Counted from the first letter of the stretch, positions 1 to 15,300 are shown. The stretch: 64,000 bases of DNA from Schizochytrium sp. TIO01 (GCA_004764695.1 SMSO01000033.1:930001-994000); one strand, 5' to 3'. The notes: generated from the sequence alone by a model not told the origin. Numbers and translations: made by a program.

Positions 1-3000
1 ACACAATCACGTGCTGCACCTCGGAAACAACACCAGCGATACCGTTTACAAGGGCTGATCCAGTTGCTGTTGTCATCACTGGGCTAGCACCTGCCCGAGC
101 AACAACGGTCGGGCTTGCAAGAGACAGTAAGCCTTGTCCTGCAGCACTCAACGTGGCAACTTTAAAAGCGTACGTGTTCTCTACTTGAAGATTTTCAGAG
201 GTAAAAGTCTTCAAAGAAGGGTCAACAAATCCATCATAGACCAACAGCGCAGGTGTACCTGCCTGTACCTCAGAGCAAACTACGGAAGCCGCGTTATTAT
301 CATTAGCTCCAGGTACAAAATCATAGCGTACACCAAATAGCCGACCAGATGTCCCTTGGAGGAGTGGAAGATCACCAGCCTCGGTTAAGAAGGTGACATC
401 CCATTGATATCCGGGGCGTGGCGATGATACAACTGAGCGCAAAATCTCAACCTGGCCAATTGTAGAGAGACGCTCAAGGGCACGGCGCATTGTTGCAGCA
501 GACGCATCATGTGGTAGTTCGCCGGTAGTTGCTCCGCGGAAACTTAGAGTAAAGGTACCAGCTAACGGCGCCACACCGTGTTGGAAAACACCAACACTAG
601 CACCCAAATTGCTTCCACCCTGAAGAAGTTGGGAATCTACGTGGAGCAACTCTACGTCACCGTGAAGAGCATCGAACGTGATACTATAAGTATACACAGA
701 GCTACTGACTGTGCGCTCGACAGACACGCCCTTGGCAGCATCGGCAGCATCAGAGACAGCTGCAAGATCATTCAAGGCACCCTCGACGACGCTTGCCTCT
801 GCATTGTAAGTGATAGACTCAGTGGTTTCTCCAGCAATACTGAGACGGAATGTCCCCCCAGTCGCGTCAGTAATTTGAACAGTTTGAATCTCGGGTAAAG
901 ATAGATCAGCAGAGACCACAATCCGTTGCACTTCGACCTTGACAGGCTCAGGATCTGCAACAGTGTTTTCTGCAACAGAGTCAAATCTGTACACCTGGAA
1001 ACCAGTGGCGGGTGATCCATGCATATCAGAGGAACGTGTCCAACCGATCGAGATTGAGGTGGCCTCAACATCAGTAATTGTAGGTGCACTGGGTACACCT
1101 GGCAATCCAGCTGTCAGAACGGCATACATAGGAGAGCGTTGTGATTTACCAATTTCATTGATTGCGCGAACGTAAAAACGATAGGGCCTACCTTCAGTAA
1201 GGCTTCCTGCGACATGAGAGAGAGATCCAGGCGTAAGCGCTGAAACTTCAACTCTTGGTGAAGCACTATTTGTACAGCTCAACCCGCTAGCAATAGGCTT
1301 AAACAGAGGAATTGTTTCGTAGTCCCCAGCAGCACCTGGTACCAAACCAGATGTAAACGCAACAGCATATTGGTATTGACCAGTGCTGGCGTCAACTGTA
1401 ATTCGGTGGACTTCAACAGTAATATTACCTCCGGTAGCTCCATTGAAAGCGGTTTCAATGGTGCTTTTCATAGTTGTAATATCAGCATTATAATCAATGG
1501 AAGCCGTAGAAATAACTTGAGGCACTACACCATCATCACTTGTGGACGAGGAAAGTTCGCCATGGATATACTCCAGCACGAAACTTCCAGAAATCACCTC
1601 CCCATCACAGGAGGGTTGGATCAATTGAACAGATGGATCACCACCGCCAGATTGAGTAATTGATATAGATGTCAGTCCAGCCCCAGCACTGATGCCACCA
1701 GTATTAGGAGTAAGCTTTTCAATCTCACCATGAAGTTCGAAAAATGTGATTGCCCACTCAAAAGCGTTAACAGACGGGTTTGTCTGAGTGACTTTGACCA
1801 CTCCAACCGCAGATTCGAGTGCAGTTTGTACATCTTCCTCGGAAGGCGCACTAGATCCATCGAAAGTAATCGCACCGGTTTCCAAACCTTGGTAAATGAA
1901 AGAAAGGTTGCCTTGAATAGCAGTAATATCACTAACAGAAAATGTTTGTACTGGAAGCTGTCCAAAGCTGATGGAGGAACCAAACGTTCCACTACCATCG
2001 TCACGGAAGATGTCGTATCCAGTGATTCGACTGCCGCCATTATCTGTTGGAGATTTCCAAAAGATACCAGCCATAGCGTCACCTGATCCGCTGGTTCCAT
2101 CGTGGGTCATAAAAGGGTCACGGCGAGGCTGTGTGGGGGCCGCTGGTGCTTTAGGAGCATCCTTTGCGATGAATATGGATTCAGCAGAGAAGGCACCAAT
2201 GCCAATTGCATTTAATGCGCGGACCTTTGCACGGTAGCGACGGCCAGGTATCAAAACAAACTTCGAGGAAGTATCAAAGGCCGTCACGTGGTCGAGACCA
2301 GTTCCGTCAAAAACCATCGCGAAATCGCCACCGGCCCACTCGTCCATCCATAGTTCGTAACCTGTGATTGGAGAGCCTCCTGTATTTGGTGGATGAGACC
2401 AAGCAATTACAAGAGATGTGGATGTAGCAGACCGCAAAACAGGTGCAGAAGGTTGGCCCGGAGTGGCGTGCTGAGGAGCTGCAACGGCAGGTGAAGTATC
2501 AGTAGGACTTCCGTAGGAGCAGCATTCTGGGCAGGTTTCCAAGCACGTTGTTCTTGCCGAGACGCGAACATAGTAACGCTGTCCGAGCGTGAGACCTGTA
2601 ATATCATAAACGTAAGGTTCCCCAGTGCTCAAGTCAGTAATCTCGCCGGTTTGATAGTCAGCAGACTGTGTACCTGGAGTTGTTTCAGAGATAGTGATAG
2701 TTGGAAGGTTGCTTGAGTAGCCTCCAACTAGACTAGAGTCTGTAGCCGTGAGGGGTCGAACATTTCCAATGTTGCAAACCGGAGAGGACTCTCCCCTACA
2801 CGAGGCAAATGTTACATCCCAGCGAATAAAAGCGCCATCAACAGCATCTACAATCTTTTCGACGTTCACTGTGCCAACCAAACTCAGAGATTCAAGAGCT
2901 TCCTTAACTATAGCTGCTGAGGCTGTGGCAGGAATTTCTGTAGTCGTTTCGGTTGCGCCAAGATCATCCTCGAATGTGAGCTGGAAAGTACCTCCAAGGG

Positions 3001-6000
3001 AGTCGGATCCTTCCTGCAGCGTTGCAACAGATACAACTGCAGTCTCGCCTGCATTCGTGGTGATGAGCTCATCATACGATGGCTCAAGCTCGGCGATGTT
3101 ATAGCTTGCGAAAGGGAATGCTCCCGGGTTAGAAGAAAACGTAATCGTCCAGACGTATGCACCTCCTGGAACTTCAGGACCAGAACGAAGAACATCCACA
3201 GTACCTACATTAGGGAGCTCTTCAAGACGACTCTTCATGACGGACTCTTCAGCGTTGTAGTCGATACCCCGCGTTGTATGCCCCCGCAACGTCAACGTGA
3301 ATTCTCCCTGAATTGAGTTACCTCGCACACTTGTGATAGAACTGCATTCACTGGAGCTATCATCGTCAGCACAAATGACAATTGCTGCATTGTTGCCACG
3401 GAGACTTTCGGTACTAGCAACGCGAATGGCAGGTTGGTCTCCATCAAGAGATGATGCAGTAAACGTGACGGAAAAATCATCATTGGCCTTAGATACCTGG
3501 ATGTTGGATGATCCAATCGAAGGTAAGTTCTCAAGAGCCTCAAGCATTGCAGTAGCATCTGCACTCACGTCGATACTTGATGTGGTAAACCCCCCAAAGC
3601 TGAGCTTGAAAGAACCAGAAACATCGGCTTTACCTTGAGTTTCCTCCTCAATATCAATAATGCGGTTTCCTTCGAGAGATTCCACATCAGTAGAAAGGAG
3701 AGGAACGTCCCCAGAGTACGCTTCTACATCAGTAAAGGTAATGTGAATGTATGAAGGGTACACGGGAGTGCCAGCGTTATCGTACAAAGCGCGACAGGCT
3801 TGAGACTGGCCAGCATCAATTGACACTGTTACTGTGTTGATGGAGGGCAACTCTTCAAGAGCTGACTCGATTTCGGTACTAGTTGCATTCCACTGGATTG
3901 GGTCTGTCCAAGCACTATCAAGAGCAAGCCTGAAACTACCGCCCTCAGCATCGCAGCGGAACTTTTGCACCTCTACCACAGTAGTTCCAGCGTTATCACC
4001 CATGATGCGAATGACCTGAATCTCATCTACGTCTGAGGTACTGGTAGAAACTTCTTGAATTTCAGGTTGGAACGGAATATCAAGTTCAACACTTTGGACT
4101 TCAGGGACAAGCTCTACAGTGTCCCATTCGATACGGAAGGCCTCTAAGATCCCGCCGCCTGGAAGAGTTGGAGCACTCATTGTGACGCGAAGCGTTGAGC
4201 CATCCACAACAGAGAGATTTGCGTTCTGTGGTGGCCCAGGTGGAATATCAATAGGTGTTATTTGCGGAGGTGAAGACATTGTGTAACGTCCCCGACCTTG
4301 ATTATTAGCAGCTGCAATGCGCACCCAATAAGTAACGCCCTGCTCTAGATCTGACAGTTCATACTCAAGCGAGGACATGTCAGTAATAGTATGGCTTCCC
4401 AGGGGAAGATCTGAACCAGCGCTGTCAAATGGAGGCGTAACACCCTTTGTCAGCTCCATGACTGAGCTTGCAACACTTGCAAATGTCCCCGTCAGGGCGG
4501 CGGCGTCTAAGACCAGACTTTCAAGATCACCATCTTCTGCGGGGCCAAGAAGCTCGGTCAGGAAGGTGACACTCCATTCGTAGCCACCGTTTTCATCTGC
4601 ATCACTTCGGGTCACTTCAACTTCGCCAATTGTGGTGAGGCGTTCGAGAGCTTCTTGAACAGCAACTGCACTTGCGTCATAAGGCAGGTATCCAGTTACC
4701 TGGCCTTCATAAGCAAGGGTGAAGTATCCCCCCAGCACAGTAGAAGTGCCTGTTTGAGAGTCAGTGACATCCACTGAGGTATCAGTAAGGTTTATATCAT
4801 TTACTGTGAGGGTGAGCCCTGAACCTGCCTTGGTATCAAATGTCACGTACCAAGTGCACTCATTGTAGGAATCAGGTGTTTGAGAATTGGATGCCACTGT
4901 GACGTTTCCGACAGTATTGAGCATCTCAAGCTCTGTAGCGATCAATTCAGCGATATTGTCACAATTACTATCAGATGGAGAGACATCAATAGGGTTGGTG
5001 CTTAAACCACCATGACTAAGACTAAAAAAACCACTAACATTTGCCGATGCTAGAGCAGTTACGGCGACTTCAAATTCTGTCTTGAACGTGCCATTATGCA
5101 CTTCAGAGACGGTCACAGAAGCGCCTGTGCCACCAAGTGAAGATGAATCTGCAATCATGTCAGCAAGATCACCCGCATCGCCAGTGAAGGAGACAAGCCA
5201 GGTGTAGCCTCCGTTGCGGTCAGGCGATGTACTATCCATTGTGACAGAAACTGCAGTGATGGTATTCAGTGCTTGGAGAGCATCCCGCACATCGTCTGCA
5301 GATGCATTAAATGCAATGGCACCGGTAGTCTCACCTTCGTAAGAGAGCGTGAACTCTCCGGAAATCTGGTTTCCAGCTATGCTAGTTCCCGTGCAGGGGG
5401 AAACTGCATCTGCATCTGCACAGACAACTACATTTGCATCCTCCCCACTGAGGCTTGACAGGGGGACCATGGTATTGAGTTTGCCAGCATTGAAGTCAGA
5501 CACAAAAGTCACGGACCAGGCGTAACCCTTTTGACCGTCGGGGCCAGCGCGGTTGACGTCAACAACATCGATTGTCGACAAAGCCTCCAAAGCTTCTTTG
5601 ACCTCATCTTCAGTGGCATCAAACGGCAAGTTGGTGGTCTGTGCGCCTTCGAAGGTAAGCGCAAAAGTTCCAGACAACTCATTGCCGTCTTGGGTGGTGT
5701 CGAACGACACCAGGGCATCGCTGTAGAGCTCGTTTGAGCCTAGCTCTAGCTGAGGGATGTTACCATCCATATCATTGAAGGTGATGGTCCAGGTGTACCC
5801 ACCGTTGCTGTCACTGCTCCGAAGCACAGTGACTGTACCATCAACATTGGGCATTGCCTCAATGATTTCTTGCATGCTAGTGCGTTCGAATGCACCACCA
5901 TCGCCGGCTTCGGCGACTGCGTCATACATGATGTAACCAGAGGTGTGAAAACCACCACCCTGAGCGGTATTGTCAAACACAACTGTGAACCAGCCACCTT

Positions 6001-6376
6001 CGATGGTGCCTGCGCTAGACGTGGTGATGGTTTGCACCTCCGGGACTGATGTTGCAGTTGTACGCACCACCTGGACCTCATCCACGTGGTCTGCAGTAAT
6101 CTTGACCTTTTGTACCTCGTTCGGTCCGAGGTCAACATTGGTCTTGACCACCTGCACTTCGCGTGTTCCGGGCTCCGTGTCCCATTCGATAGTGTAGGAT
6201 GTGACCTCTGAGCCACCATCGTCGAGCGGTGCTGCAAAGTCCACAAACAAGCTTGAGGCGGTGCGCAGGTAAAGTTGTACATCCGTCGGCGCGCCGGGTG
6301 CTTGAGCGCTCTGAGCCTTCACGCCCAGGTTCGCAAGCGAGAACGCTGCAAGAACTTTAAGGATGAACATGAGCAT
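1..6376 (-). CDS. Giant secreted 'titin-like' fibronectin type III / EVQ-repeat surface protein (5' part, >=2125 aa, continues beyond left edge)
   Basis: ATG at 6376. Manual translation gives signal-peptide-like MLMFILKVLAAFSLANLGVKAQ, then FN3 start PGAPTDVQLYLRTASSLFVDFAAPLDDGGSEVTSYTIEWD, repeated EVQ/EIQ strands and ~13 copies of a GxFxLxFxGxxTxxLxxDAxxxxVxxALExLxxIGxVxV...GYxWxVTF module. The same frame reads sensibly at every segment I translated, down to position 2 (...VNGIAGVVSEVQHVIV). Presumably missing from the ORF track because no stop lies in the window. Confidence 0.93.
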   Translation of the reverse strand, partial: MLMFILKVLAAFSLANLGVKAQSAQAPGAPTDVQLYLRTASSLFVDFAAPLDDGGSEVTSYTIEWDTEPGTREVQVVKTNVDLGPNEVQKVKITADHVDEVQVVRTTATSVPEVQTITTSSAGTIEGGWFTVVFDNTAQGGGFHTSGYIMYDAVAEAGDGGAFERTSMQEIIEAMPNVDGTVTVLRSSDSNGGYTWTITFNDMDGNIPQLELGSNELYSDALVSFDTTQDGNELSGTFALTFEGAQTTNLPFDATEDEVKEALEALSTIDVVDVNRAGPDGQKGYAWSVTFVSDFNAGKLNTMVPLSSLSGEDANVVVCADADAVSPCTGTSIAGNQISGEFTLSYEGETTGAIAFNASADDVRDALQALNTITAVSVTMDSTSPDRNGGYTWLVSFTGDAGDLADMIADSSSLGGTGASVTVSEVHNGTFKTEFEVAVTALASANVSGFFSLSHGGLSTNPIDVSPSDSNCDNIAELIATELEMLNTVGNVTVASNSQTPDSYNECTWYVTFDTKAGSGLTLTVNDINLTDTSVDVTDSQTGTSTVLGGYFTLAYEGQVTGYLPYDASAVAVQEALERLTTIGEVEVTRSDADENGGYEWSVTFLTELLGPAEDGDLESLVLDAAALTGTFASVASSVMELTKGVTPPFDSAGSDLPLGSHTITDMSSLEYELSDLEQGVTYWVRIAAANNQGRGRYTMSSPPQITPIDIPPGPPQNANLSVVDGSTLRVTMSAPTLPGGGILEAFRIEWDTVELVPEVQSVELDIPFQPEIQEVSTSTSDVDEIQVIRIMGDNAGTTVVEVQKFRCDAEGGSFRLALDSAWTDPIQWNATSTEIESALEELPSINTVTVSIDAGQSQACRALYDNAGTPVYPSYIHITFTDVEAYSGDVPLLSTDVESLEGNRIIDIEEETQGKADVSGSFKLSFGGFTTSSIDVSADATAMLEALENLPSIGSSNIQVSKANDDFSVTFTASSLDGDQPAIRVASTESLRGNNAAIVICADDDSSSECSSITSVRGNSIQGEFTLTLRGHTTRGIDYNAEESVMKSRLEELPNVGTVDVLRSGPEVPGGAYVWTITFSSNPGAFPFASYNIAELEPSYDELITTNAGETAVVSVATLQEGSDSLGGTFQLTFEDDLGATETTTEIPATASAAIVKEALESLSLVGTVNVEKIVDAVDGAFIRWDVTFASCRGESSPVCNIGNVRPLTATDSSLVGGYSSNLPTITISETTPGTQSADYQTGEITDLSTGEPYVYDITGLTLGQRYYVRVSARTTCLETCPECCSYGSPTDTSPAVAAPQHATPGQPSAPVLRSATSTSLVIAWSHPPNTGGSPITGYELWMDEWAGGDFAMVFDGTGLDHVTAFDTSSKFVLIPGRRYRAKVRALNAIGIGAFSAESIFIAKDAPKAPAAPTQPRRDPFMTHDGTSGSGDAMAGIFWKSPTDNGGSRITGYDIFRDDGSGTFGSSISFGQLPVQTFSVSDITAIQGNLSFIYQGLETGAITFDGSSAPSEEDVQTALESAVGVVKVTQTNPSVNAFEWAITFFELHGEIEKLTPNTGGISAGAGLTSISITQSGGGDPSVQLIQPSCDGEVISGSFVLEYIHGELSSSTSDDGVVPQVISTASIDYNADITTMKSTIETAFNGATGGNITVEVHRITVDASTGQYQYAVAFTSGLVPGAAGDYETIPLFKPIASGLSCTNSASPRVEVSALTPGSLSHVAGSLTEGRPYRFYVRAINEIGKSQRSPMYAVLTAGLPGVPSAPTITDVEATSISIGWTRSSDMHGSPATGFQVYRFDSVAENTVADPEPVKVEVQRIVVSADLSLPEIQTVQITDATGGTFRLSIAGETTESITYNAEASVVEGALNDLAAVSDAADAAKGVSVERTVSSSVYTYSITFDALHGDVELLHVDSQLLQGGSNLGASVGVFQHGVAPLAGTFTLSFRGATTGELPHDASAATMRRALERLSTIGQVEILRSVVSSPRPGYQWDVTFLTEAGDLPLLQGTSGRLFGVRYDFVPGANDNNAASVVCSEVQAGTPALLVYDGFVDPSLKTFTSENLQVENTYAFKVATLSAAGQGLLSLASPTVVARAGASPVMTTATGSALVNGIAGVVSEVQHVIV

Positions 6377-8007: not shown

Positions 8008-11000
8008 GCCGAGCATGCTCCAAGCAGACAGAATGTTGTTCGCTCATGCTGCGAATTGCCGGCACGTAAATGAGGCCAAACTAAAGCAAACTAAAACAAA
8101 CCAAAGCAAACTAAAGCAACCCAAAGCAACCCAAAGCAACCCAAACTAACCCAAACTAAACTAAACCAAACTAAACCAAACCAAAGACAAGACAAGACTT
8201 GGCCACCTTTAATGTGTTTTCGATGGCGAGAACCTCAGGACCCAAGGAGCTTGGTTCTATCAAAGGCAGCAAATACGAATCATTGTAAAAACAAGCGAAA
8301 GAGAGTCAGAGAGAAAGAAGAACTCGGACGGTGGATATCGAAAGCCTTCCGTAGGCAGGATGCAATTTGTAGTACTCTCAGCAGGTGACGAGATACCGAA
8401 GGAGATGCATTCTGATCCCATAGGGTATGCATGCACCTAGCCAGCTGGCTAGGCACTCAGCTGGAAGGCACCTGGGGAAAACCAGCGACAGCTTCGCCAT
8501 GGAAATCGTCGCGTGATGGAGGCTCTTCCAGCCCCCATTGGATTTTTCCCTCGTTGACCAGCGGCATCTTCAGGAGGCGGGCGTCCTCTTCGCAGCTAGC
8601 GAGCTAGCCACAGACTCGCAGCCCACGGAGAAGCAGGCGCTTAAATGTCACCGCAGGCACGGGCGCTGATTTCTCTGTATCTTCTTCAAGCTGCTCTTGC
8701 AGGTGTGAGGCAGAAAGCAATGCCACGAGCGGATTCAATCGTGGCGAAAGAAAGACACGGCGGTCTTTCATTCACACTCAAACGTGGTGGGTACCTACTC
8801 GAATGCCAGCCTGGGCTCCAACGTTTGAAGCGCGTCCTTTCAGACCGGATCTGTGAACGTTCGCACCACCTATGTACTTTGTTTTCTAGTGTATAGTACT
8901 GTCTGTTCACTGTTAAGAGAACTCAAAGTTGCGTGCTGGGGTAGGCTTCGCCTGCGTCGGTTGAGTAAGGGCTGCATAGACTAAACGATAGTCCTCCTCA
9001 AACTGCCGTTAGTTCCTAGCGTTCCGGAAGCGTTCTAGCTTTTGTTTTTTTCCCCCTCAGAAGGAGCTCGTGGACGACAGTTGGACCGAACTAAGTGGCA
9101 AAAAGTCCGAAAGGGAGAAGCAACAAAGTCATCGGAGACCTTGAGGTGTGGGCCGTGCTAACGGACGAAAGACCAGCGAAAGACCCGCGAAAGACCAGTG
9201 GTGGCGTTTGTGTCGTTTCGATGCGCTGGATTAAAGAGCTCTGCAGGCACGCACGCACCTCTTGCAGGTTTATCTTGCGATTGCATGAAGTAATAGTTTC
9301 TGGGAAGAGAAAGGCACATGAAGTGAAAGATTGTGGTCAATCTAAGAAAGCCTAGCCGAGTCTTTCATTATGGCGGCTCAATATATCATGGCGCGCGTTT
9401 ATGTGCTGCTGTTGGGTAGAATTCGCTACTGGCATGCTTGCAGCGATCAATTACTATACGATGTGGGAGATGAGGATCCCATTTTGTACGCGTGAAGATG
9501 CCTAAAGTTGAGCAGTTCTGGTAATCATGTGATCCTCTATCTAGATAATATCATTCTGGATGATCACCCAATCAAGTGGACAGCAAAATACGCTTTCCGA
9601 TTCACATGCGAATGTCGTTCATTGCATCGATGGAGTGAGTTCTGCAACCTCCCGGGTACCCAGTACTCAATGTAAAGAACAATCATACAATAAATCGAAA
9701 TGAAATCGAACAGCAATAAATAAAGGTTGAGTATCTTGGGCATCGCATGGGACTTTTTCATCCGCCAGGCACCCCTCCTGTACAGGACCAGTTTGAGGGT
9801 GGCTCAATATGTCGTGTATACTAAAGGAACACTTAAAAGCATATGGCTGCAGTGGCACGGAGTATGTTACCTGTGATGTAACCTGTAACGGATTCTATAT
9901 TTCTTCCTTTCACCTATCTCTCTCAGTCTCGTTACCTCAAAAGCGCGTCCGCATCTGTGAGCTGTGAGTCATCTCTCTCTGGTGGTGTCATCAGTACATT
10001 GGTGTAAAGCGGCATCGAGCACAGCCTGCAATGTGTTAGCAAAGTTTGGTATATACCAAGTTTGTGTCCTCTTCGCTGTGATTAAGAAAATACTGGCGTA
10101 GATTCCAGTATTAAACTGGCTAGCTCGCATCATACTACTACATTGAAGGTAAGTATTTCCTTCGAGCCATCGACGGTGTAGCTGAATCTAAAGTTTGCCT
10201 CTGATCACAATAAATAAATCAACGTCAACCAGTGTGCGCTTTGTCTGGCCTATGCCACAAAGCCTGACAGAAACAGCTTCATGTGATTTTTTGTTTTGTT
10301 TATGTTTTGTTTTTTTCTTGAAGAGCACGGCGAATTTGAGAAGTTTGTAGTTACGTCTCTAAATCAGAGATCTCTTATGCAAATTGTTTCATCCTATTAC
10401 TGCGAATTGGGATATGAAAAAACTTCATGGTATTACCAGTGCCTGGTTCGACTACCGGAGAAGCCCCACTTCTCCTAGCGCCTCTGCAAGTCACAACAAG
10501 AATGTCAGATCCCATTCAATGAACAGAACGATCTTGAGGATAAAAGGCGCAAGTGTTGATTGATTTTCAATTTTGTTGATAAGAGTTCCTCCCTTGTCTT
10601 GGTGGCTCAATCACTTCGCTTTTGACTGGCCGTTGTAAGCACGGCAAGAATTCAAGTGACTATAGCAGGAGTCCAGTCGCAGGATCCAAGGAGGGAACAT
10701 CTCCCAAGAAGGCGCTTGTCCGTGTGGCCGTGAAAACTCATGCTCATAAGCTTTCTCAAAACCATTCTGTCGAACTAGCCACCCATCTTTAGGTTCCTGG
10801 CTTCCAGTCAACCGGTTCTAGCCACTGCATCTGGACGTAGAGCCAGTATTAATTATTTGTTTGTTTATCAAAGGACCCTTATGCATCTACTACAAGTACT
10901 CGAGCGCGCTTCACAAAAAGTGCAGTATGCTCCACGGCTTTTCCAGTTGGGAGAACGAAGTCAAGAAGGGTAGCTAGGGCCAGAGGCCAGGTTCGTGCGG

Positions 11001-12356: not shown

Positions 12357-15300
12357 TTAGAATGCATCACCATACTCAGCTAGAGCGCGAGGAACATCTT
12401 GAGAGAATACAATCTCCATGAAAGATCTGTACTCCAACGTGCGTTCTTTCGACATGGCAAGTCCGAGAGCGCGGGGCTTGAATACAAAATCCGTTATCTC
12501 ATCGCGCACAGATTCATTAAAGTCTGGGTTTGTAGCGAAGAGAGCAAGAATAAAGTTCTCCCTACTTACCCAACCATGGTGATCAATATCATACGAGTTG
12601 AAGTTTTTGAGAAGCTGGTCCCTCCGCCGTAAAAAAGAGGAGCTAAAAGTTCGCATCATTGTGCGCACACGGTCAGCTACATTTTCTCTTTCTTGTGCTG
12701 CCTTGACAACTGCCTCATACTTCAGAATATTGCTATCAGACGAGTTTGAGTTTTCAAACAGGTCGGGGATCTGACCTGTCGTCACACTGCTCAATACTTC
12801 CTCATAGTTAATCAGCCCATCTCCGTTTCTGTCAAAGAGGCGCATCAAAGTTAACTTGTCACGCTCGTTACTCAGGTAAATATCATATCGGCGTAACATG
12901 TTCCGAAATTCGTCCCATGAAACTGAGCCCGAGCTATTCTCATCCACCTCCTTGAATTTGAGCAAGAGGTTTGTATCGGCTTCGCGTAGAGTCGAGAGCT
13001 TTTGAAATAGAGCAGCAGTTGCGACCTCAAGACTTGCATTCACAGGGGAGGAGGCTGCAGATGGACCCTGATTAGCAGCATTAGCAGTTCCGCTATAGAG
13101 CGGTTTGGCCTTACGTAAGGCAGCAGCGAATTCGTGATAGTAGATCCGTCCGTCACCGTCACGATCGTAGTGACGCACAAGAGTGAGGCGTTCATGCTGG
13201 GTCAATTCTTCACCAATGAGCCCGAAATCCAAGGCCCACTTGGCCACGAGCTCTCCCAATTGATCTGGATGAATATATCCCCTGTTCTCGCGATCGATAA
13301 CGCGAAATGCTTCCGTAACATTTACATGGTTTTCAGCTAGAATCTCCGCAAGCATGCTGGCAATAGCGTCTACGTTGCTTTGAGGAAAGAGCTGTGGGTG
13401 CTCTTCCATAAGATCAAGCGTCTCTTTGTCGGCACTTATGATTTCGAACTCCTGTGTACAAGCGCCGGTCTGAGGAAACATGAACTGAATTCGTGTACCT
13501 ACATAAAAATCTGAAGAACGAATATATCTCGCAGAGAATTTTGACGCATTTGAAGCCACAGCCTTATCCTGCATAACCTGCTCAACAAACTCTGTGAAAT
13601 CAATAGCAGCATCATTTGAATGGTCATACATACTAAAGAGCTCGTTTAGCTCTTCATCAGAAAATGCAGCGTTCAAAACACCAATTGAACGAAGTCCAAT
13701 TCGGAAATTGTCGAATGAAATTCGCCCGTGCTGGTCTGTTCCAAATTTCCTAAAAGCACGCAAAAGTCCATACGGACCACCGACCATGCGCGATTGAATT
13801 TTCTCGAGAATAGCATCCTTTAAAGCTTGCTGTTTAGCTGATTGCTTGTGTTTCTTTTCAAGCACAGGTTTCTTGTACCTGCCGCGTGCAAGAAACTTTC
13901 CACCGACTATACCAGTGTTCGGGATCGGAGGCTCATAGATTGCACAAGTATCATCATCCATGTAGTAGCTGATGAGAAATTTACGGCCGTGGTCTTCTGC
14001 CCTCGGTTCAACAAATCGCGCAGAAAACTTGAGAACCTTGCCTGTATTATTGAGATATCGGTGAAGGTCCTGGGTGACTGCTTTAGGTACAAGATTAATA
14101 CAGTTGGCTAACGAATCTGCTTCAGACCCCCAACCGTTATAGGGAGGAATCACCTTGGTAATCACCTTCGCAGGGGGCTTTTCTACATCAACGGTAGGCT
14201 GTGATATGTCGAGCACGGTTTCGAAATATCTCATCGTAAACTCATCAAGGCACTGAAGGATGAGAAGTTTGCGACCATTGCAAGCTACGTAATGACCACA
14301 TACCAAGTCTTTGGGGCTCACAAACCCACCCTTGGGGTTTTCTTTATCATAAAGCAATTTCCCGCGCTTATACAAGGTACTTGCAACCCCCTTTTCATGA
14401 ATAGCAATTGAATCGTCAACAAGGTAGTAGTTGAGTTGATAAAAGTGCTTTTCACCATAAAGCCTTGTTGTGTCATCCCAGACACAGGAAAGGCGCAGTA
14501 CACCCTTTCGTACTCTATTACCTGTTGTATACTTACCGAACGATACTGTGTTGAGATTGGAACCATGCCCCATACTGGCGCCTTGCAGGGAAGGAATTGA
14601 TGTATTTCTACCTCCTAGACCTGACTTACTCAATTTCATCCGATGTTCGTCCTCCGGATACGGTTTCGGTGCCCCCGCATCAATCCCCTTCTCTGCAAGC
14701 CACTGACGAGTTTTCGGATCTACATCTACAATATAATATAAGATTCCAAAGAGCCTGAAGTTTTGGCCGATGAAAAGCTGAGTTGGATCAAAGCTCTCCC
14801 CATCTTCTCGTGTCAGTATTGCACGCTTCACCAGCACACCTTGAGGCAAACCTGAGTTTCGCTCCCGTGGTTCACGTATAGAGATACTGCCGTCCTCTAA
14901 AAAGAAAAGAAGCGCACATCGACGAACACGAAGGGTTTCTGCAGCACTTTCAAAAACAGGTTCGCAAAAATACAAAAAAAAGCGTAGCACATCTTTGTCA
15001 TGCTTGATCCATGTTGGTGGTACTCGTAAAGAGGGCATCGACTTGCAAATTGAGAGAGAAGATTCCTTTTTCTTGATTGGAGCAATTGCAAGGCTTTGTA
15101 ATTCGCGTTTGAGTGCAAGCTGTTCTTCAATACCTTTGTATTGCTCTAGTAGCGCAGCTTTGTGTTCCTCAAGGGCATCGAGACTCGCATTTAGTGTTGG
15201 TGCGTTCGGCAGCTCAGCAAGTTTAGGTTTATTACTCATTCTTGCAATTTTGGCTTCGTTTTCAGCCTGCTGGATGATGTGACTCTTTCGGGCATGGCCC

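What the first reader, a model, noticed from the sequence alone, without database searches (positions are those of the whole stretch)
130..6376. Nested 'matryoshka' architecture: split FN3 domains carrying inserts with matched EVQ-strand and module counts
Seen: four FN3 domains are cut in two. The first half (P..P...GGS.IT.Y.IEWD type) is separated from the second half (Y.I.GL..G..Y.VRV.A.N type) by several hundred residues. Insert 1 (~6180-4380) has four back-to-back EVQ strands (REVQVVK, NEVQKVK, DEVQVVR, PEVQTIT) and five GxFxLxF modules, one of which has its own candidate strand (TEFEVAV). Insert 2 (~4120-2640) has four EVQ/EIQ strands and four modules. Insert 3 (~1990-1230) has two modules, each with its own strand (PVQTFSV, PSVQLIQ). 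Insert 4 (~940-200) has two strands and two modules. One FN3 (~2460-2190) is intact. Inference: each clustered EVQ strand completes a module far downstream, so the chain runs out through the strands and back through the modules. This would form double-stranded side arms on an FN3 backbone, a bottle-brush surface fibre built by recursive domain insertion. Similar proteins are commonly labelled only 'titin-like'; I do not know of this counting rule being described.
Basis: partly seen in the sequence, partly recalled or inferred. Interest (0 to 1): 0.85.

Follow-up and report, generated by a model that had tools for sequence, protein, structure and literature searches.

The report
Strand-threaded nested domain arms on FN3
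The window holds the start of a 16,252-residue secreted protein of a marine protist in which rods of up to 13 small domains are inserted into a loop of fibronectin-type domains, apparently by sending the chain out through one beta-strand per domain and back through the domain bodies, a way of building repeat proteins that I found in no paper.

Summary
Window 2-6376 (minus strand) is the N-terminus of one uninterrupted 16,252-codon ORF. It holds five FN3 domains. Four carry an insert in the C-C' loop.

The inserts are built from an unannotated ~108-residue module. This module has no Pfam family and about 18,000 cluster representatives. Its closest solved relatives are decoration domains of mycobacteriophage Bxb1.

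Modules come in two forms. Some have their own N-terminal "EVQ" strand. Others lack it, and the same number of orphan strands then sits clustered upstream.

- AF2 models (pLDDT 80-83) close the split FN3 into one domain.
- In the same models each orphan strand sits in the beta1 position of a downstream body, in last-in-first-out order.
- An alignment-free ESMFold2 test docked strands s1-s3 onto bodies M4-M2 (score 0.75, best control 0.02). Each strand lay between beta5 and beta6.
- Strand and module counts match across 290 inserts (r = 0.93).
- A cysteine pair co-varies between s1 and the last body.

No experiment backs the pairing. No model coordinates were available. Function is inferred as an adhesive or structural surface fibre.

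Other readers of this scan noted the same design elsewhere in this gene and in another gene of this genome.

The parts
2..6376 (-). First 2,125 codons of a single-exon ORF of 16,252 codons. It continues to about 42.4 kb left of the window (G000:C32 about 887620).
   Evidence: no joints or indels in contigs of 4 public runs; 25 synonymous against 15 non-synonymous strain differences
6308..6376 (-). Signal-peptide-like N-terminus (MLMFILKVLAAFSLANLGVKAQS)
   Evidence: read from the sequence; no predictor was run
6170..6298 (-). FN3-1, strands A-C
   Evidence: fn3 Pfam hit; DSSP strands 8-16, 19-25 and 37-43 of model mc7855c0c7deb; FN3 superpositions
6017..6163 (-). Insert 1: cluster of four EVQ strands. 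s1 6137-6163, s2 6095-6121, s3 6056-6082, s4 6017-6043. s4 is the own strand of M1.
   Evidence: PSSM hits; predicted as beta strands with pLDDT 78-90; s2 takes the beta1 place of M3 (9d93 gp23, Z 15.3, model 61..409)
4427..6016 (-). Insert 1: five module bodies. M1 5690-6016, M2 5384-5689, M3 5081-5383, M4 4751-5053 with its own strand TEFEVAV at 5054-5077, M5 4427-4750.
   Evidence: module HMM hits; homolog alignment
4262..4414 (-). FN3-1, strands C'-G
   Evidence: DSSP 637-678; FN3 superpositions spanning model 1..680-689
4118..4243 (-). FN3-2, strands A-C
   Evidence: FN3 N-part HMM
3950..4105 (-). Insert 2: four EVQ/EIQ strands. s1 4079-4105, s2 4037-4066, s3 4001-4027, s4 3950-3976.
   Evidence: pairing s4:M1, s3:M2, s2:M3, s1:M4
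2678..3949 (-). Insert 2: four module bodies. M1 3629-3949, M2 3359-3628, M3 3008-3325, M4 2678-3004.
2507..2659 (-). FN3-2, strands C'-G
   Evidence: FN3 C-part HMM
2192..2479 (-). FN3-3, intact
   Evidence: best fn3 stretch in Pfam, residues 1308-1401; N and C parts adjacent
1979..2119 (-). FN3-4, strands A-C
   Evidence: FN3 N-part HMM
1256..1957 (-). Insert 3: two complete modules in tandem, each with its own degenerate strand (PVQTFSV, SVQLIQP)
   Evidence: the module HMM alignments start at profile positions 5 and 4, so they include the strand
1106..1255 (-). FN3-4, strands C'-G (…RPYRFYVRAINEIG…)
   Evidence: motif read from the sequence; below my HMM threshold; not modelled
968..1105 (-). 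FN3-5, strands A-C
   Evidence: motif read from the sequence; not modelled
869..940 (-). Insert 4: two strands (KVEVQRIVVS, LPEIQTVQIT)
   Evidence: PSSM 11.6 and 17.2
242..868 (-). Insert 4: two module bodies. M1 575-868, M2 242-574 (strandless).
   Evidence: Six homologs with one module here have one strand, or none in P0017, while those with two modules have two. That compares counts across relatives; it does not show which arrangement is the derived one.
77..229 (-). FN3-5, strands C'-G (…YAFKVATLSAAGQG…)
   Evidence: read from the sequence; not modelled
2..28 (-). Own strand (VSEVQHVIV) of the next module, whose body lies beyond the window

Best explanation
The region encodes the N-terminal part of a giant secreted protein of a thraustochytrid-like protist. 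Its backbone is a string of FN3 domains.

Into the C-C' loop of most FN3 domains, arrays of a ~108-residue module are inserted. The module has the order beta1 (EVQxIxT) - beta2 (GxFxLxF) - beta3 - helix - beta4 - beta5 (YxWxVTF) - beta6. Beta1 lies antiparallel between beta5 and beta6, so the ends of a complete module are adjacent.

Arrays come in two forms:
- Tandem (sM sM).
- Nested (s1…sn Mn…M1). Here the beta1 strands of all but the innermost module are moved to the outgoing leg.

In a nested array the chain leaves the FN3 and passes as beta1 through each module in turn. It then folds the innermost body and returns body by body. The last body, paired with the first strand, ends next to the FN3 C' strand.

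This lets a rod of n domains sit in a loop whose ends must stay together, and it explains why orphan strands equal strandless bodies. The arrangement is what recursive insertion of a complete unit into the beta1-beta2 connection of an existing unit would produce.

Shown: the sequence anatomy, the counts and the homology. Predicted: FN3 closure and last-in-first-out pairing. Inferred: rod-like arms on an FN3 backbone and an adhesive or structural role outside the cell.
For: - Anatomy and extent.
- Module homology: a profile of 24 modules hits Bxb1 gp23 at E 4e-45. PHROG major-tail and sheath families match at E 1e-8 to 1e-9.
- FN3 closure: Z 12-14 over model 1..680-689.
- s2:M3 in insert 1: 9d93 gp23, Z 15.3, rmsd 1.7, 103 aligned residues, 31% identity, model 61..409.
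- All four pairs in insert 2, modelled without the FN3. The two high-scoring pairs are s4:M1 at Z 11.9 and s3:M2 at Z 11.0-11.8. The other two are weaker: s2:M3 at Z 3.3-5.3 and s1:M4 at Z 5.0-7.0.
- ESMFold2 without an alignment: strands against bodies scored 0.75, best of 3 controls 0.02. In calibration the mark was reached by 51 of 78 solved complexes and 2 of 108 mismatched pairs. The runs agreed in at least 97% of contacts, and the partner's pLDDT was at least 82.
- Named contacts in that test: s2 with 324-328 and 365-370, s3 with 217 and 219, s1 with 435.
- Counts: 290 inserts in 205 proteins. Strands equal modules in 181, differ by one in 91, r = 0.93, and 178 are balanced words.
- The 13-strand cluster at residues 11634-11804 of the same protein is followed by 13 bodies, 12 of them strandless. 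The body paired with the first strand ends directly before the FN3 C-part.
- A Cys at the end of s1 co-occurs with a third Cys in the M4 tail: both present in 8 homologs, neither in 8, one exception. Fisher p = 4e-4, but the pattern follows clades.
Against: - There is no experimental structure, and I had no model coordinates. The pairings rest on first and last aligned residues plus one contact list.
- The alignments that place s2:M3 and s1:M4 in insert 2 have low Z (3-7).
- Both predictors may generalise from canonical modules that carry their own strand, so they could favour complementation.
- The automatic counts are noisy. Only 62% are exactly equal; weak strands are missed and a helix motif gives false hits.
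- The mirror-order subtype test barely separates last-in-first-out (r = 0.32, P = 0.009) from first-in-first-out (r = 0.24, P = 0.036).
- Expression is not shown. The runs that hold the stretch are only guessed to be RNA.
- Inserts 3 and 4 and FN3-4 and FN3-5 were not modelled.
Confidence: 0.8

Rival explanations
1. The orphan strands complement strandless bodies of other molecules. This would be intermolecular donor-strand exchange or domain swapping, so the protein would polymerise or cross-link into a mesh rather than forming closed arms in cis.
For: The strand cluster docks onto the bodies as a separate chain with high confidence. Equal counts fit trans as well as cis pairing. Giant secreted proteins often form matrices.
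Against: In single-chain models the strands pair in cis and in nested order, with or without the FN3. Cis partners have a very high local concentration. The outermost body ends exactly at the FN3 C' strand, as expected for closed hairpin arms.
Confidence: 0.1
2. The clustered EVQ strands form a separate small beta-sheet or meander at the base of the insert, and the bodies fold without them. The matching counts would then reflect co-duplication only.
For: Strands spaced 13 residues apart could form a meander. DSSP alone cannot tell which partner each strand has.
Against: The alignment ranges start at each successive strand and end at the matching body. Explicit contacts place each strand between beta5 and beta6. 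Strandless bodies would lack a central strand. Their pLDDT drops from 87-88 to 71-72 without the strands. The Cys pair co-varies.
Confidence: 0.05
3. The strands do complete the bodies, but not in nested order. They might pair first-in-first-out, or each body might take the beta6 of its neighbour.
For: The subtype Mantel test also gives a positive value for first-in-first-out order (r = 0.24).
Against: all give last-in-first-out order. First-in-first-out order would need long crossing connections that the 4-6-residue linkers between strands cannot make.
Confidence: 0.03
4. The ORF is not a functional gene. It would be an assembly artefact or a decaying repeat array.
For: Expression is not demonstrated.
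Against: There are 48.8 kb without a stop. Contigs from four studies are colinear and free of indels, and synonymous changes outnumber non-synonymous ones 25 to 15. Homologs with the same domain order occur in oomycetes, diatoms and many metagenomes.
Confidence: 0.02

Closest known systems
Mycobacteriophage Bxb1 virion decoration modules: gp23 'tail tip cage', C-terminal domains of tail tube gp19 and of the major capsid protein (PDB 9d93, 9d94, 9d9w/x; Freeman et al. 2025, cited); Patience gp22 (8giu)
   Same: It is the same fold and a detectable sequence family. The profile E-value is 4e-45. Superposition gives Z 15.3 at 31% identity and Z 11-12. By sequence, gp23 itself has three N-terminal module halves followed by C-terminal halves (N1 N2 N3C3 C2 C1). 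That is also a nested order.
   Different: - These are phage virion proteins of bacteria, not a eukaryotic secreted giant.
- At most three levels are nested.
- The split in gp23 lies after beta4, not after beta1.
- They are not inserted into FN3.
- I could not read the paper or the coordinates, so I do not know whether the nesting in gp23 was described or how its halves pair.
Flagellin, FliD and phage tail-sheath 'out-and-back' domain nesting
   Same: The chain runs outward through N-terminal segments of successive domains and returns through their C-terminal segments. Outer domains are insertions in inner ones. The structural likeness of the module to FliD D2-D3, flagellin outer domains and sheath insertion domains is weak (Z 4.4-7).
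   Different: These have different, heterogeneous domains and few levels, and the axial domains are helical. Here one module family is nested 2-13 deep, and only a single strand per level goes out. The statement on flagellin topology rests on general knowledge and was not tested here.
Insulin-receptor FnIII-2 with its insert domain
   Same: It is an FN3 that carries a long insertion and still superposes on the split FN3-1 of the model (4zxb_E 593..807, 7md5_A 592..808, Z 12.7).
   Different: The insert there is a largely unstructured segment of about 120 residues, not an array of folded modules. Its position in the C-C' loop is from my memory and was not tested.
Donor-strand complementation of chaperone-usher pili
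   Same: An incomplete beta domain is completed by a strand supplied from elsewhere.
   Different: In pili the missing strand is the C-terminal edge strand of an Ig-like fold and comes from the next subunit. Here it is the N-terminal, central strand and is predicted to come from the same chain. This is general knowledge, not tested.
Earlier notes of this scan (s1-833163; s1-848980/986/991, s1-849010)
   Same: They describe the same nesting idea in another gene of this genome (an IPT loop with 13 copies) and in the 13-deep arm of this very gene.
   Different: Those are AI notes on other DNA. Only the arm of this gene was partly re-counted here.

Membership tests
Fibronectin type III (PF00041) | Profile match above Pfam's gathering score | tested here: met
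   115.6 bits against a cut-off of 25, in 5 stretches
Fibronectin type III (PF00041) | Seven-strand sandwich that superposes on solved FN3 domains | tested here: met
   Tested for FN3-1 only, in a predicted model: Z 12-14, rmsd 1.6-3, 90-103 residues aligned over model 1..680-689
Fibronectin type III (PF00041) | Contiguous domain of about 90-100 residues | tested here: not met
   Four of the five FN3 in the window have 240-590 residues inserted between strands C and C'. They are still FN3, but with an insertion.
Bxb1-type phage decoration module (no Pfam family) | Sequence-profile relationship | tested here: met
   E 4e-45 to 9d93 gp23, 3e-7 to the capsid protein and 3e-4 to the tail tube; PHROG 10909 and 2839. 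A single module finds nothing by tblastn.
Bxb1-type phage decoration module (no Pfam family) | Same fold, including beta1 next to beta5 and beta6 | tested here: met
   Z 15.3 and 11-12; contacts of the strands with beta5 and beta6. These are predicted models only.
Bxb1-type phage decoration module (no Pfam family) | Part of a phage virion protein | tested here: not met
   It is a chromosomal 48.8-kb ORF of a 64-Mb eukaryotic genome with a signal-peptide-like start.
Titin-like (the label given to homologs) | Ig I-set/FN3 super-repeats plus a kinase domain in an intracellular sarcomeric protein | tested here: not met
   Pfam finds only fn3 in the window part. Homologs add PA14, filamin and TIG domains but no kinase. 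The start looks like a signal peptide. 'Titin' is a source's name for a Phytophthora homolog.
Donor-strand complementation systems (chaperone-usher pili) | Missing C-terminal strand supplied by another subunit | tested here: not met
   The missing strand is N-terminal and is predicted to be supplied in cis. Trans exchange is not excluded.
Flagellin/FliD-type nested outer domains | Domains made of N- and C-terminal segments around inserted domains | tested here: inconclusive
   The topology is analogous in the models. The fold likeness is weak (Z 4.4-7). No D0/D1 helices were seen.

The most novel reading that the evidence does not exclude
Nested, strand-threaded arrays would be an undescribed class of repeat protein. 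They would follow a balanced-bracket grammar, with one outgoing strand per returning body, and would grow by recursive insertion. They would be widespread in stramenopiles and foreshadowed in phage gp23. In addition, the orphan strands could exchange between molecules, so that these giant fibres cross-link by domain swapping into an extracellular mesh.
Probability: 0.15. Interest if true: 0.9.

Novelty: new variant of a known kind. Interest (0 to 1): 0.78.

Why it matters
Repeat proteins are normally linear strings of domains. Domain insertion is normally limited to domains whose two ends lie together.

If the predicted threading is real, it shows a simple rule that lets evolution put a rod of any length into a loop. 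That would build branched, single-chain fibres, here up to 13 levels deep.

It would also do three further things:
- Give a structural reading to a very large unannotated domain family, with about 18,000 cluster representatives and no Pfam entry.
- Link surface proteins of stramenopiles (thraustochytrids, oomycetes, diatoms) to decoration domains of actinobacteriophage virions.
- Offer a design principle for engineered branched or mechanically clamped proteins.

The counting rule can be checked in any genome from sequence alone.

Tried and rejected
I could not cut homologs by DNA reference, so full-length homologs were aligned to the query pieces. I checked locally that MAFFT placed them correctly.
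- Model coordinates are not exposed. Contact maps could not be computed, and pairing was read from alignment ranges and from the contact list of the complex test.
- The subtype mirror test (Mantel) favours last-in-first-out order but does not clearly beat first-in-first-out order. I count it as weak evidence.
- The first automatic count of orphan strands against strandless bodies was noisy: only 56 of 200 were exactly equal and r = 0.85. It improved after removing false hits inside module bodies and admitting weak strands that lie in register. That refinement uses the expected spacing, so it is not fully blind.
- Pfam gives no family for the module.
- tblastn of one module against phage genomes finds nothing.
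- ESM Atlas gives only sub-threshold leads to oomycete EGF proteins.
- Hits to tubular mastigoneme proteins (9ufe) are weak, E 0.01-0.09, and were not pursued.
- Five literature searches found no description of the architecture. The Bxb1 paper is not held.
- RNA evidence is missing. No holder is on record as RNA, so expression is not claimed.


Full report
**What is there**

The finding lies in one minus-strand open frame. It starts at the Met at window 6376 and runs off the left end of the window. The window is G000:C32:930001-994000 of a 64-Mb, 37-contig genome. With the flanking DNA the frame stays open for 16,252 codons, down to about C32:887620, without an intron.

Earlier notes of this scan call the organism an Aurantiochytrium-like thraustochytrid. 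I did not test that.

The start reads like a signal peptide. Pfam recognises only fn3 in the first 2,125 residues.

Contigs from four public runs of four studies lie colinear on window 400-6376 without joints or indels. Their differences are 25 synonymous against 15 non-synonymous. The frame is therefore under coding constraint. Whether the runs are RNA is only guessed, so I do not claim expression.

A 10-residue scoring matrix for the EVQ strand finds 66 sites of 9 bits or more in the protein, against 1.6 in shuffles.

A profile of 24 canonical modules (A1) defines a unit of about 108 residues: beta1 EVQxIxT, beta2 GxFxLxF, beta3, a helix (DASAxxLxxALExL), beta4 (VxVxR), beta5 (YxWxVTF), a GDxPxL loop and beta6 (AxVxVxE).

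Modules fall into two classes. Some have their own strand directly upstream; others have none.

In the window:
- Insert 1 reads s s s s M M M sM M.
- Insert 2 reads s s s s M M M M.
- Insert 3 reads sM sM.
- Insert 4 reads s s M M.

TEFEVAV, the candidate strand of the fourth module of insert 1, aligns with KEVQKVT or KEIQTVR in homologs.

The FN3 domains are interrupted between strands C and C', not halved.

**What the module is**

It has no Pfam family. It is a very large family: 17,962 representatives of 50%-identity clusters at E of 1e-3 or better, and 7,301 at 1e-10 or better. Many are giant proteins with up to 55 copies.

The profile hits solved chains of mycobacteriophage Bxb1. These are gp23 'tail tip cage' (E 4e-45), the major capsid protein and the tail tube protein. 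The entry is identified as Bxb1. PHROG families of major tail and sheath proteins also match.

By sequence, gp23 has three N-terminal module halves followed by the C-terminal halves. A nested order of this module therefore already exists in a solved structure, with the split after beta4. I could not read the paper or the coordinates.

**Do the FN3 parts close, and where do the strands go?**

I folded residues 24-712 (FN3-1 with insert 1) with 13 homologs. Mean pLDDT was 80.5, and the strands scored 78-90.

About 50 solved FN3 domains superpose with Z 12-14 on a domain made of model residues 1 to about 50 plus about 630-689. The best match of all is gp23: Z 15.3, rmsd 1.7 Å, 103 aligned residues, 31% identity. 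It spans model 61..409 against chain 388..526. The orphan strand s2 (PNEVQKVKI) thus takes the place of gp23's own strand (INEVQVVEL) beside the third body.

I then folded insert 2 alone, residues 752-1238, without any FN3, with 19 homologs. Mean pLDDT was 83.1 and pTM 0.60. With the FN3 hits gone, the list shows all four pairs:

| Pair | Matching chains | Z | Model range |
|---|---|---|---|
| s4 + M1 | Bxb1 capsid domain | 11.9 | 48..164 |
| s3 + M2 | Bxb1 tail tube, Bxb1 capsid, Patience gp22 | 11.0-11.8 | 31-33..252-267 |
| s2 + M3 | RRM/ferredoxin-like chains | 3.3-5.3 | 18-22..369-375 |
| s1 + M4 | phage Mu, Bas63 and flagellin chains | 5.0-7.0 | 1-9..482-485 |

**An independent test**

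ESMFold2, used without my alignment, was given the three orphan strands (43 residues) as one chain and the bodies M2-M4 as another.

- The score was 0.75 (runs 0.78, 0.75 and 0.73), against 0.02 for the best of three controls.
- In calibration this mark was reached by 51 of 78 solved complexes and 2 of 108 mismatched pairs.
- The runs agree in at least 97% of contacts, and the partner's pLDDT is at least 82.

The named contacts are:
- s2 residues 22-25 with 324-328 and 365-370 (beta5 and beta6 of M3).
- s3 residues 36 and 38 with 217 and 219 (beta5 of M2).
- s1 residue 12 with 435 (beta5 of M4).

The index pairs run in opposite directions, so beta1 is antiparallel to both neighbours. The ends of a complete module therefore lie together.

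The pLDDT of the bodies is 87-88 with the strands and 71-72 when an unrelated peptide replaces them. This supports binding in the model; it does not show it. The predictor may also be generalising from canonical modules.

**Counts**

In 290 FN3 inserts with content, from 205 proteins, the numbers of strands and modules are equal in 181 and differ by one in 91 (r = 0.93). 178 inserts are balanced bracket words. The common patterns are sMsM (63), ssMM (25), ssssMMMM (15) and ssssMMMsMM (7).

A blinder version of the count gave r = 0.85. Detector noise explains many of the off-by-one cases I inspected. These include weak strands such as QEQKVVV or RQEVRVS, and a false hit in the helix.

At the position of insert 4, six homologs (P0009, P0010, P0012, P0013, P0017 and P0021) have a single module. 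All but one of them (P0017) have a single strand. Relatives with two modules have two strands.

Further along the same protein, 13 strands spaced 13-14 residues apart (residues 11634-11804) are followed by 13 bodies, 12 of them strandless. The body that pairs with the first strand is itself split by a further insert. Its C-terminal part lies directly before the FN3 C-part. Other first readers of this scan noted the same arm.

**Covariation**

In insert 2, a Cys at the end of s1 co-occurs with a third Cys in the tail of M4: both are present in 8 homologs and neither in 8, with one exception. Fisher p is 4e-4, but the pattern follows clades.

The two TQ-type strands of the long arm (s10, s12) pair, in mirror order, with the two bodies of one subtype (M4, M2). 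A Mantel test only weakly prefers this order: r = 0.32 against 0.24 for forward order.

**How it most likely works**

The steps are marked as shown, predicted or inferred.

- Shown: the anatomy, the counts and the homology.
- Predicted: the chain leaves FN3 strand C and runs outward as beta1 of the outermost body, then of the next, and so on. It folds the innermost body and returns body by body, and the last beta6 leads into FN3 strand C'.
- Inferred: nested arrays are rods and tandem arrays are clusters at the base. The whole protein has about 34 FN3 N-parts by my profile, 19 of them with inserts. It also has a PA14/filamin-like middle part. It would be a long backbone with side arms, probably an adhesive or structural fibre outside the cell.
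- Inferred: the arrays grew by inserting complete units into the beta1-beta2 connection.

**Comparison and novelty**

The nearest relatives by family are the Bxb1 decoration modules. The nearest by principle are the out-and-back nesting of flagellin and FliD and the strand complementation of pili. An FN3 with a long insert is known from the insulin receptor.

What I did not find in five literature searches is one module nested in itself many levels deep, with a single strand per level and a counting rule.

The scan itself found this design before: on other DNA of this genome (s1-833163) and in neighbouring windows of this gene.

I class it as a new variant of a known kind. It is well supported in silico and untested at the bench.

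Noticed in passing
L003, L002, L004, L005, L006 (G000:C32:887620-930000), minus strand: The gene is a single exon of 16,252 codons. By my profiles it has about 34 FN3 N-parts, 77 module hits and 72 strand hits.
   Followed up: partly
L003, protein residues about 2750-5450: The middle part has PA14-like units (…YFDNQWL…DFNWG…) alternating with filamin/Ig-like repeats and further modules. Homologs carry PF07691 (PA14) and PF00630 (filamin). This hints at carbohydrate binding.
   Followed up: no
L004/L005, protein residues 11512-13990: One FN3 is split by about 2,450 residues. A cluster of 13 strands spaced 13-14 residues apart is followed by 13 bodies. Strands of TQ type (s10, s12) mirror bodies of one subtype (M4, M2), as expected if a two-level cassette had been duplicated by insertion.
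   Followed up: partly
L002/L004/L005, protein residues 8316-8475, 9433-9640, 13262-13981; also oomycete homologs P0002-P0007 in insert 1: Modules are themselves hosts of insertions. SH3-like 'GDxIRI/GDxVxI' units or whole modules sit between beta3 and the helix or after beta4. This gives FN3 > module > other domain > module nesting.
   Followed up: no
alignment A1 against the PDB and the ESM Atlas: There are weak profile hits to tubular mastigoneme proteins of a stramenopile (9ufe, E 0.01-0.09). There are also sub-threshold Atlas leads to small oomycete EGF-domain proteins. Together they suggest a possible link between the module and flagellar hair proteins.
   Followed up: no
window 2678-4105 and homologs P0009-P0013, P0017-P0019: A candidate disulfide links the end of orphan strand s1 to the tail of the last body M4. 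Both Cys are present or both absent in 16 of 17 homologs.
   Followed up: partly
window 400-6376: Strain-level differences among four public runs amount to 40 substitutions, no indels and no stops, with 25 of them synonymous.
   Followed up: yes
   Followed up: no
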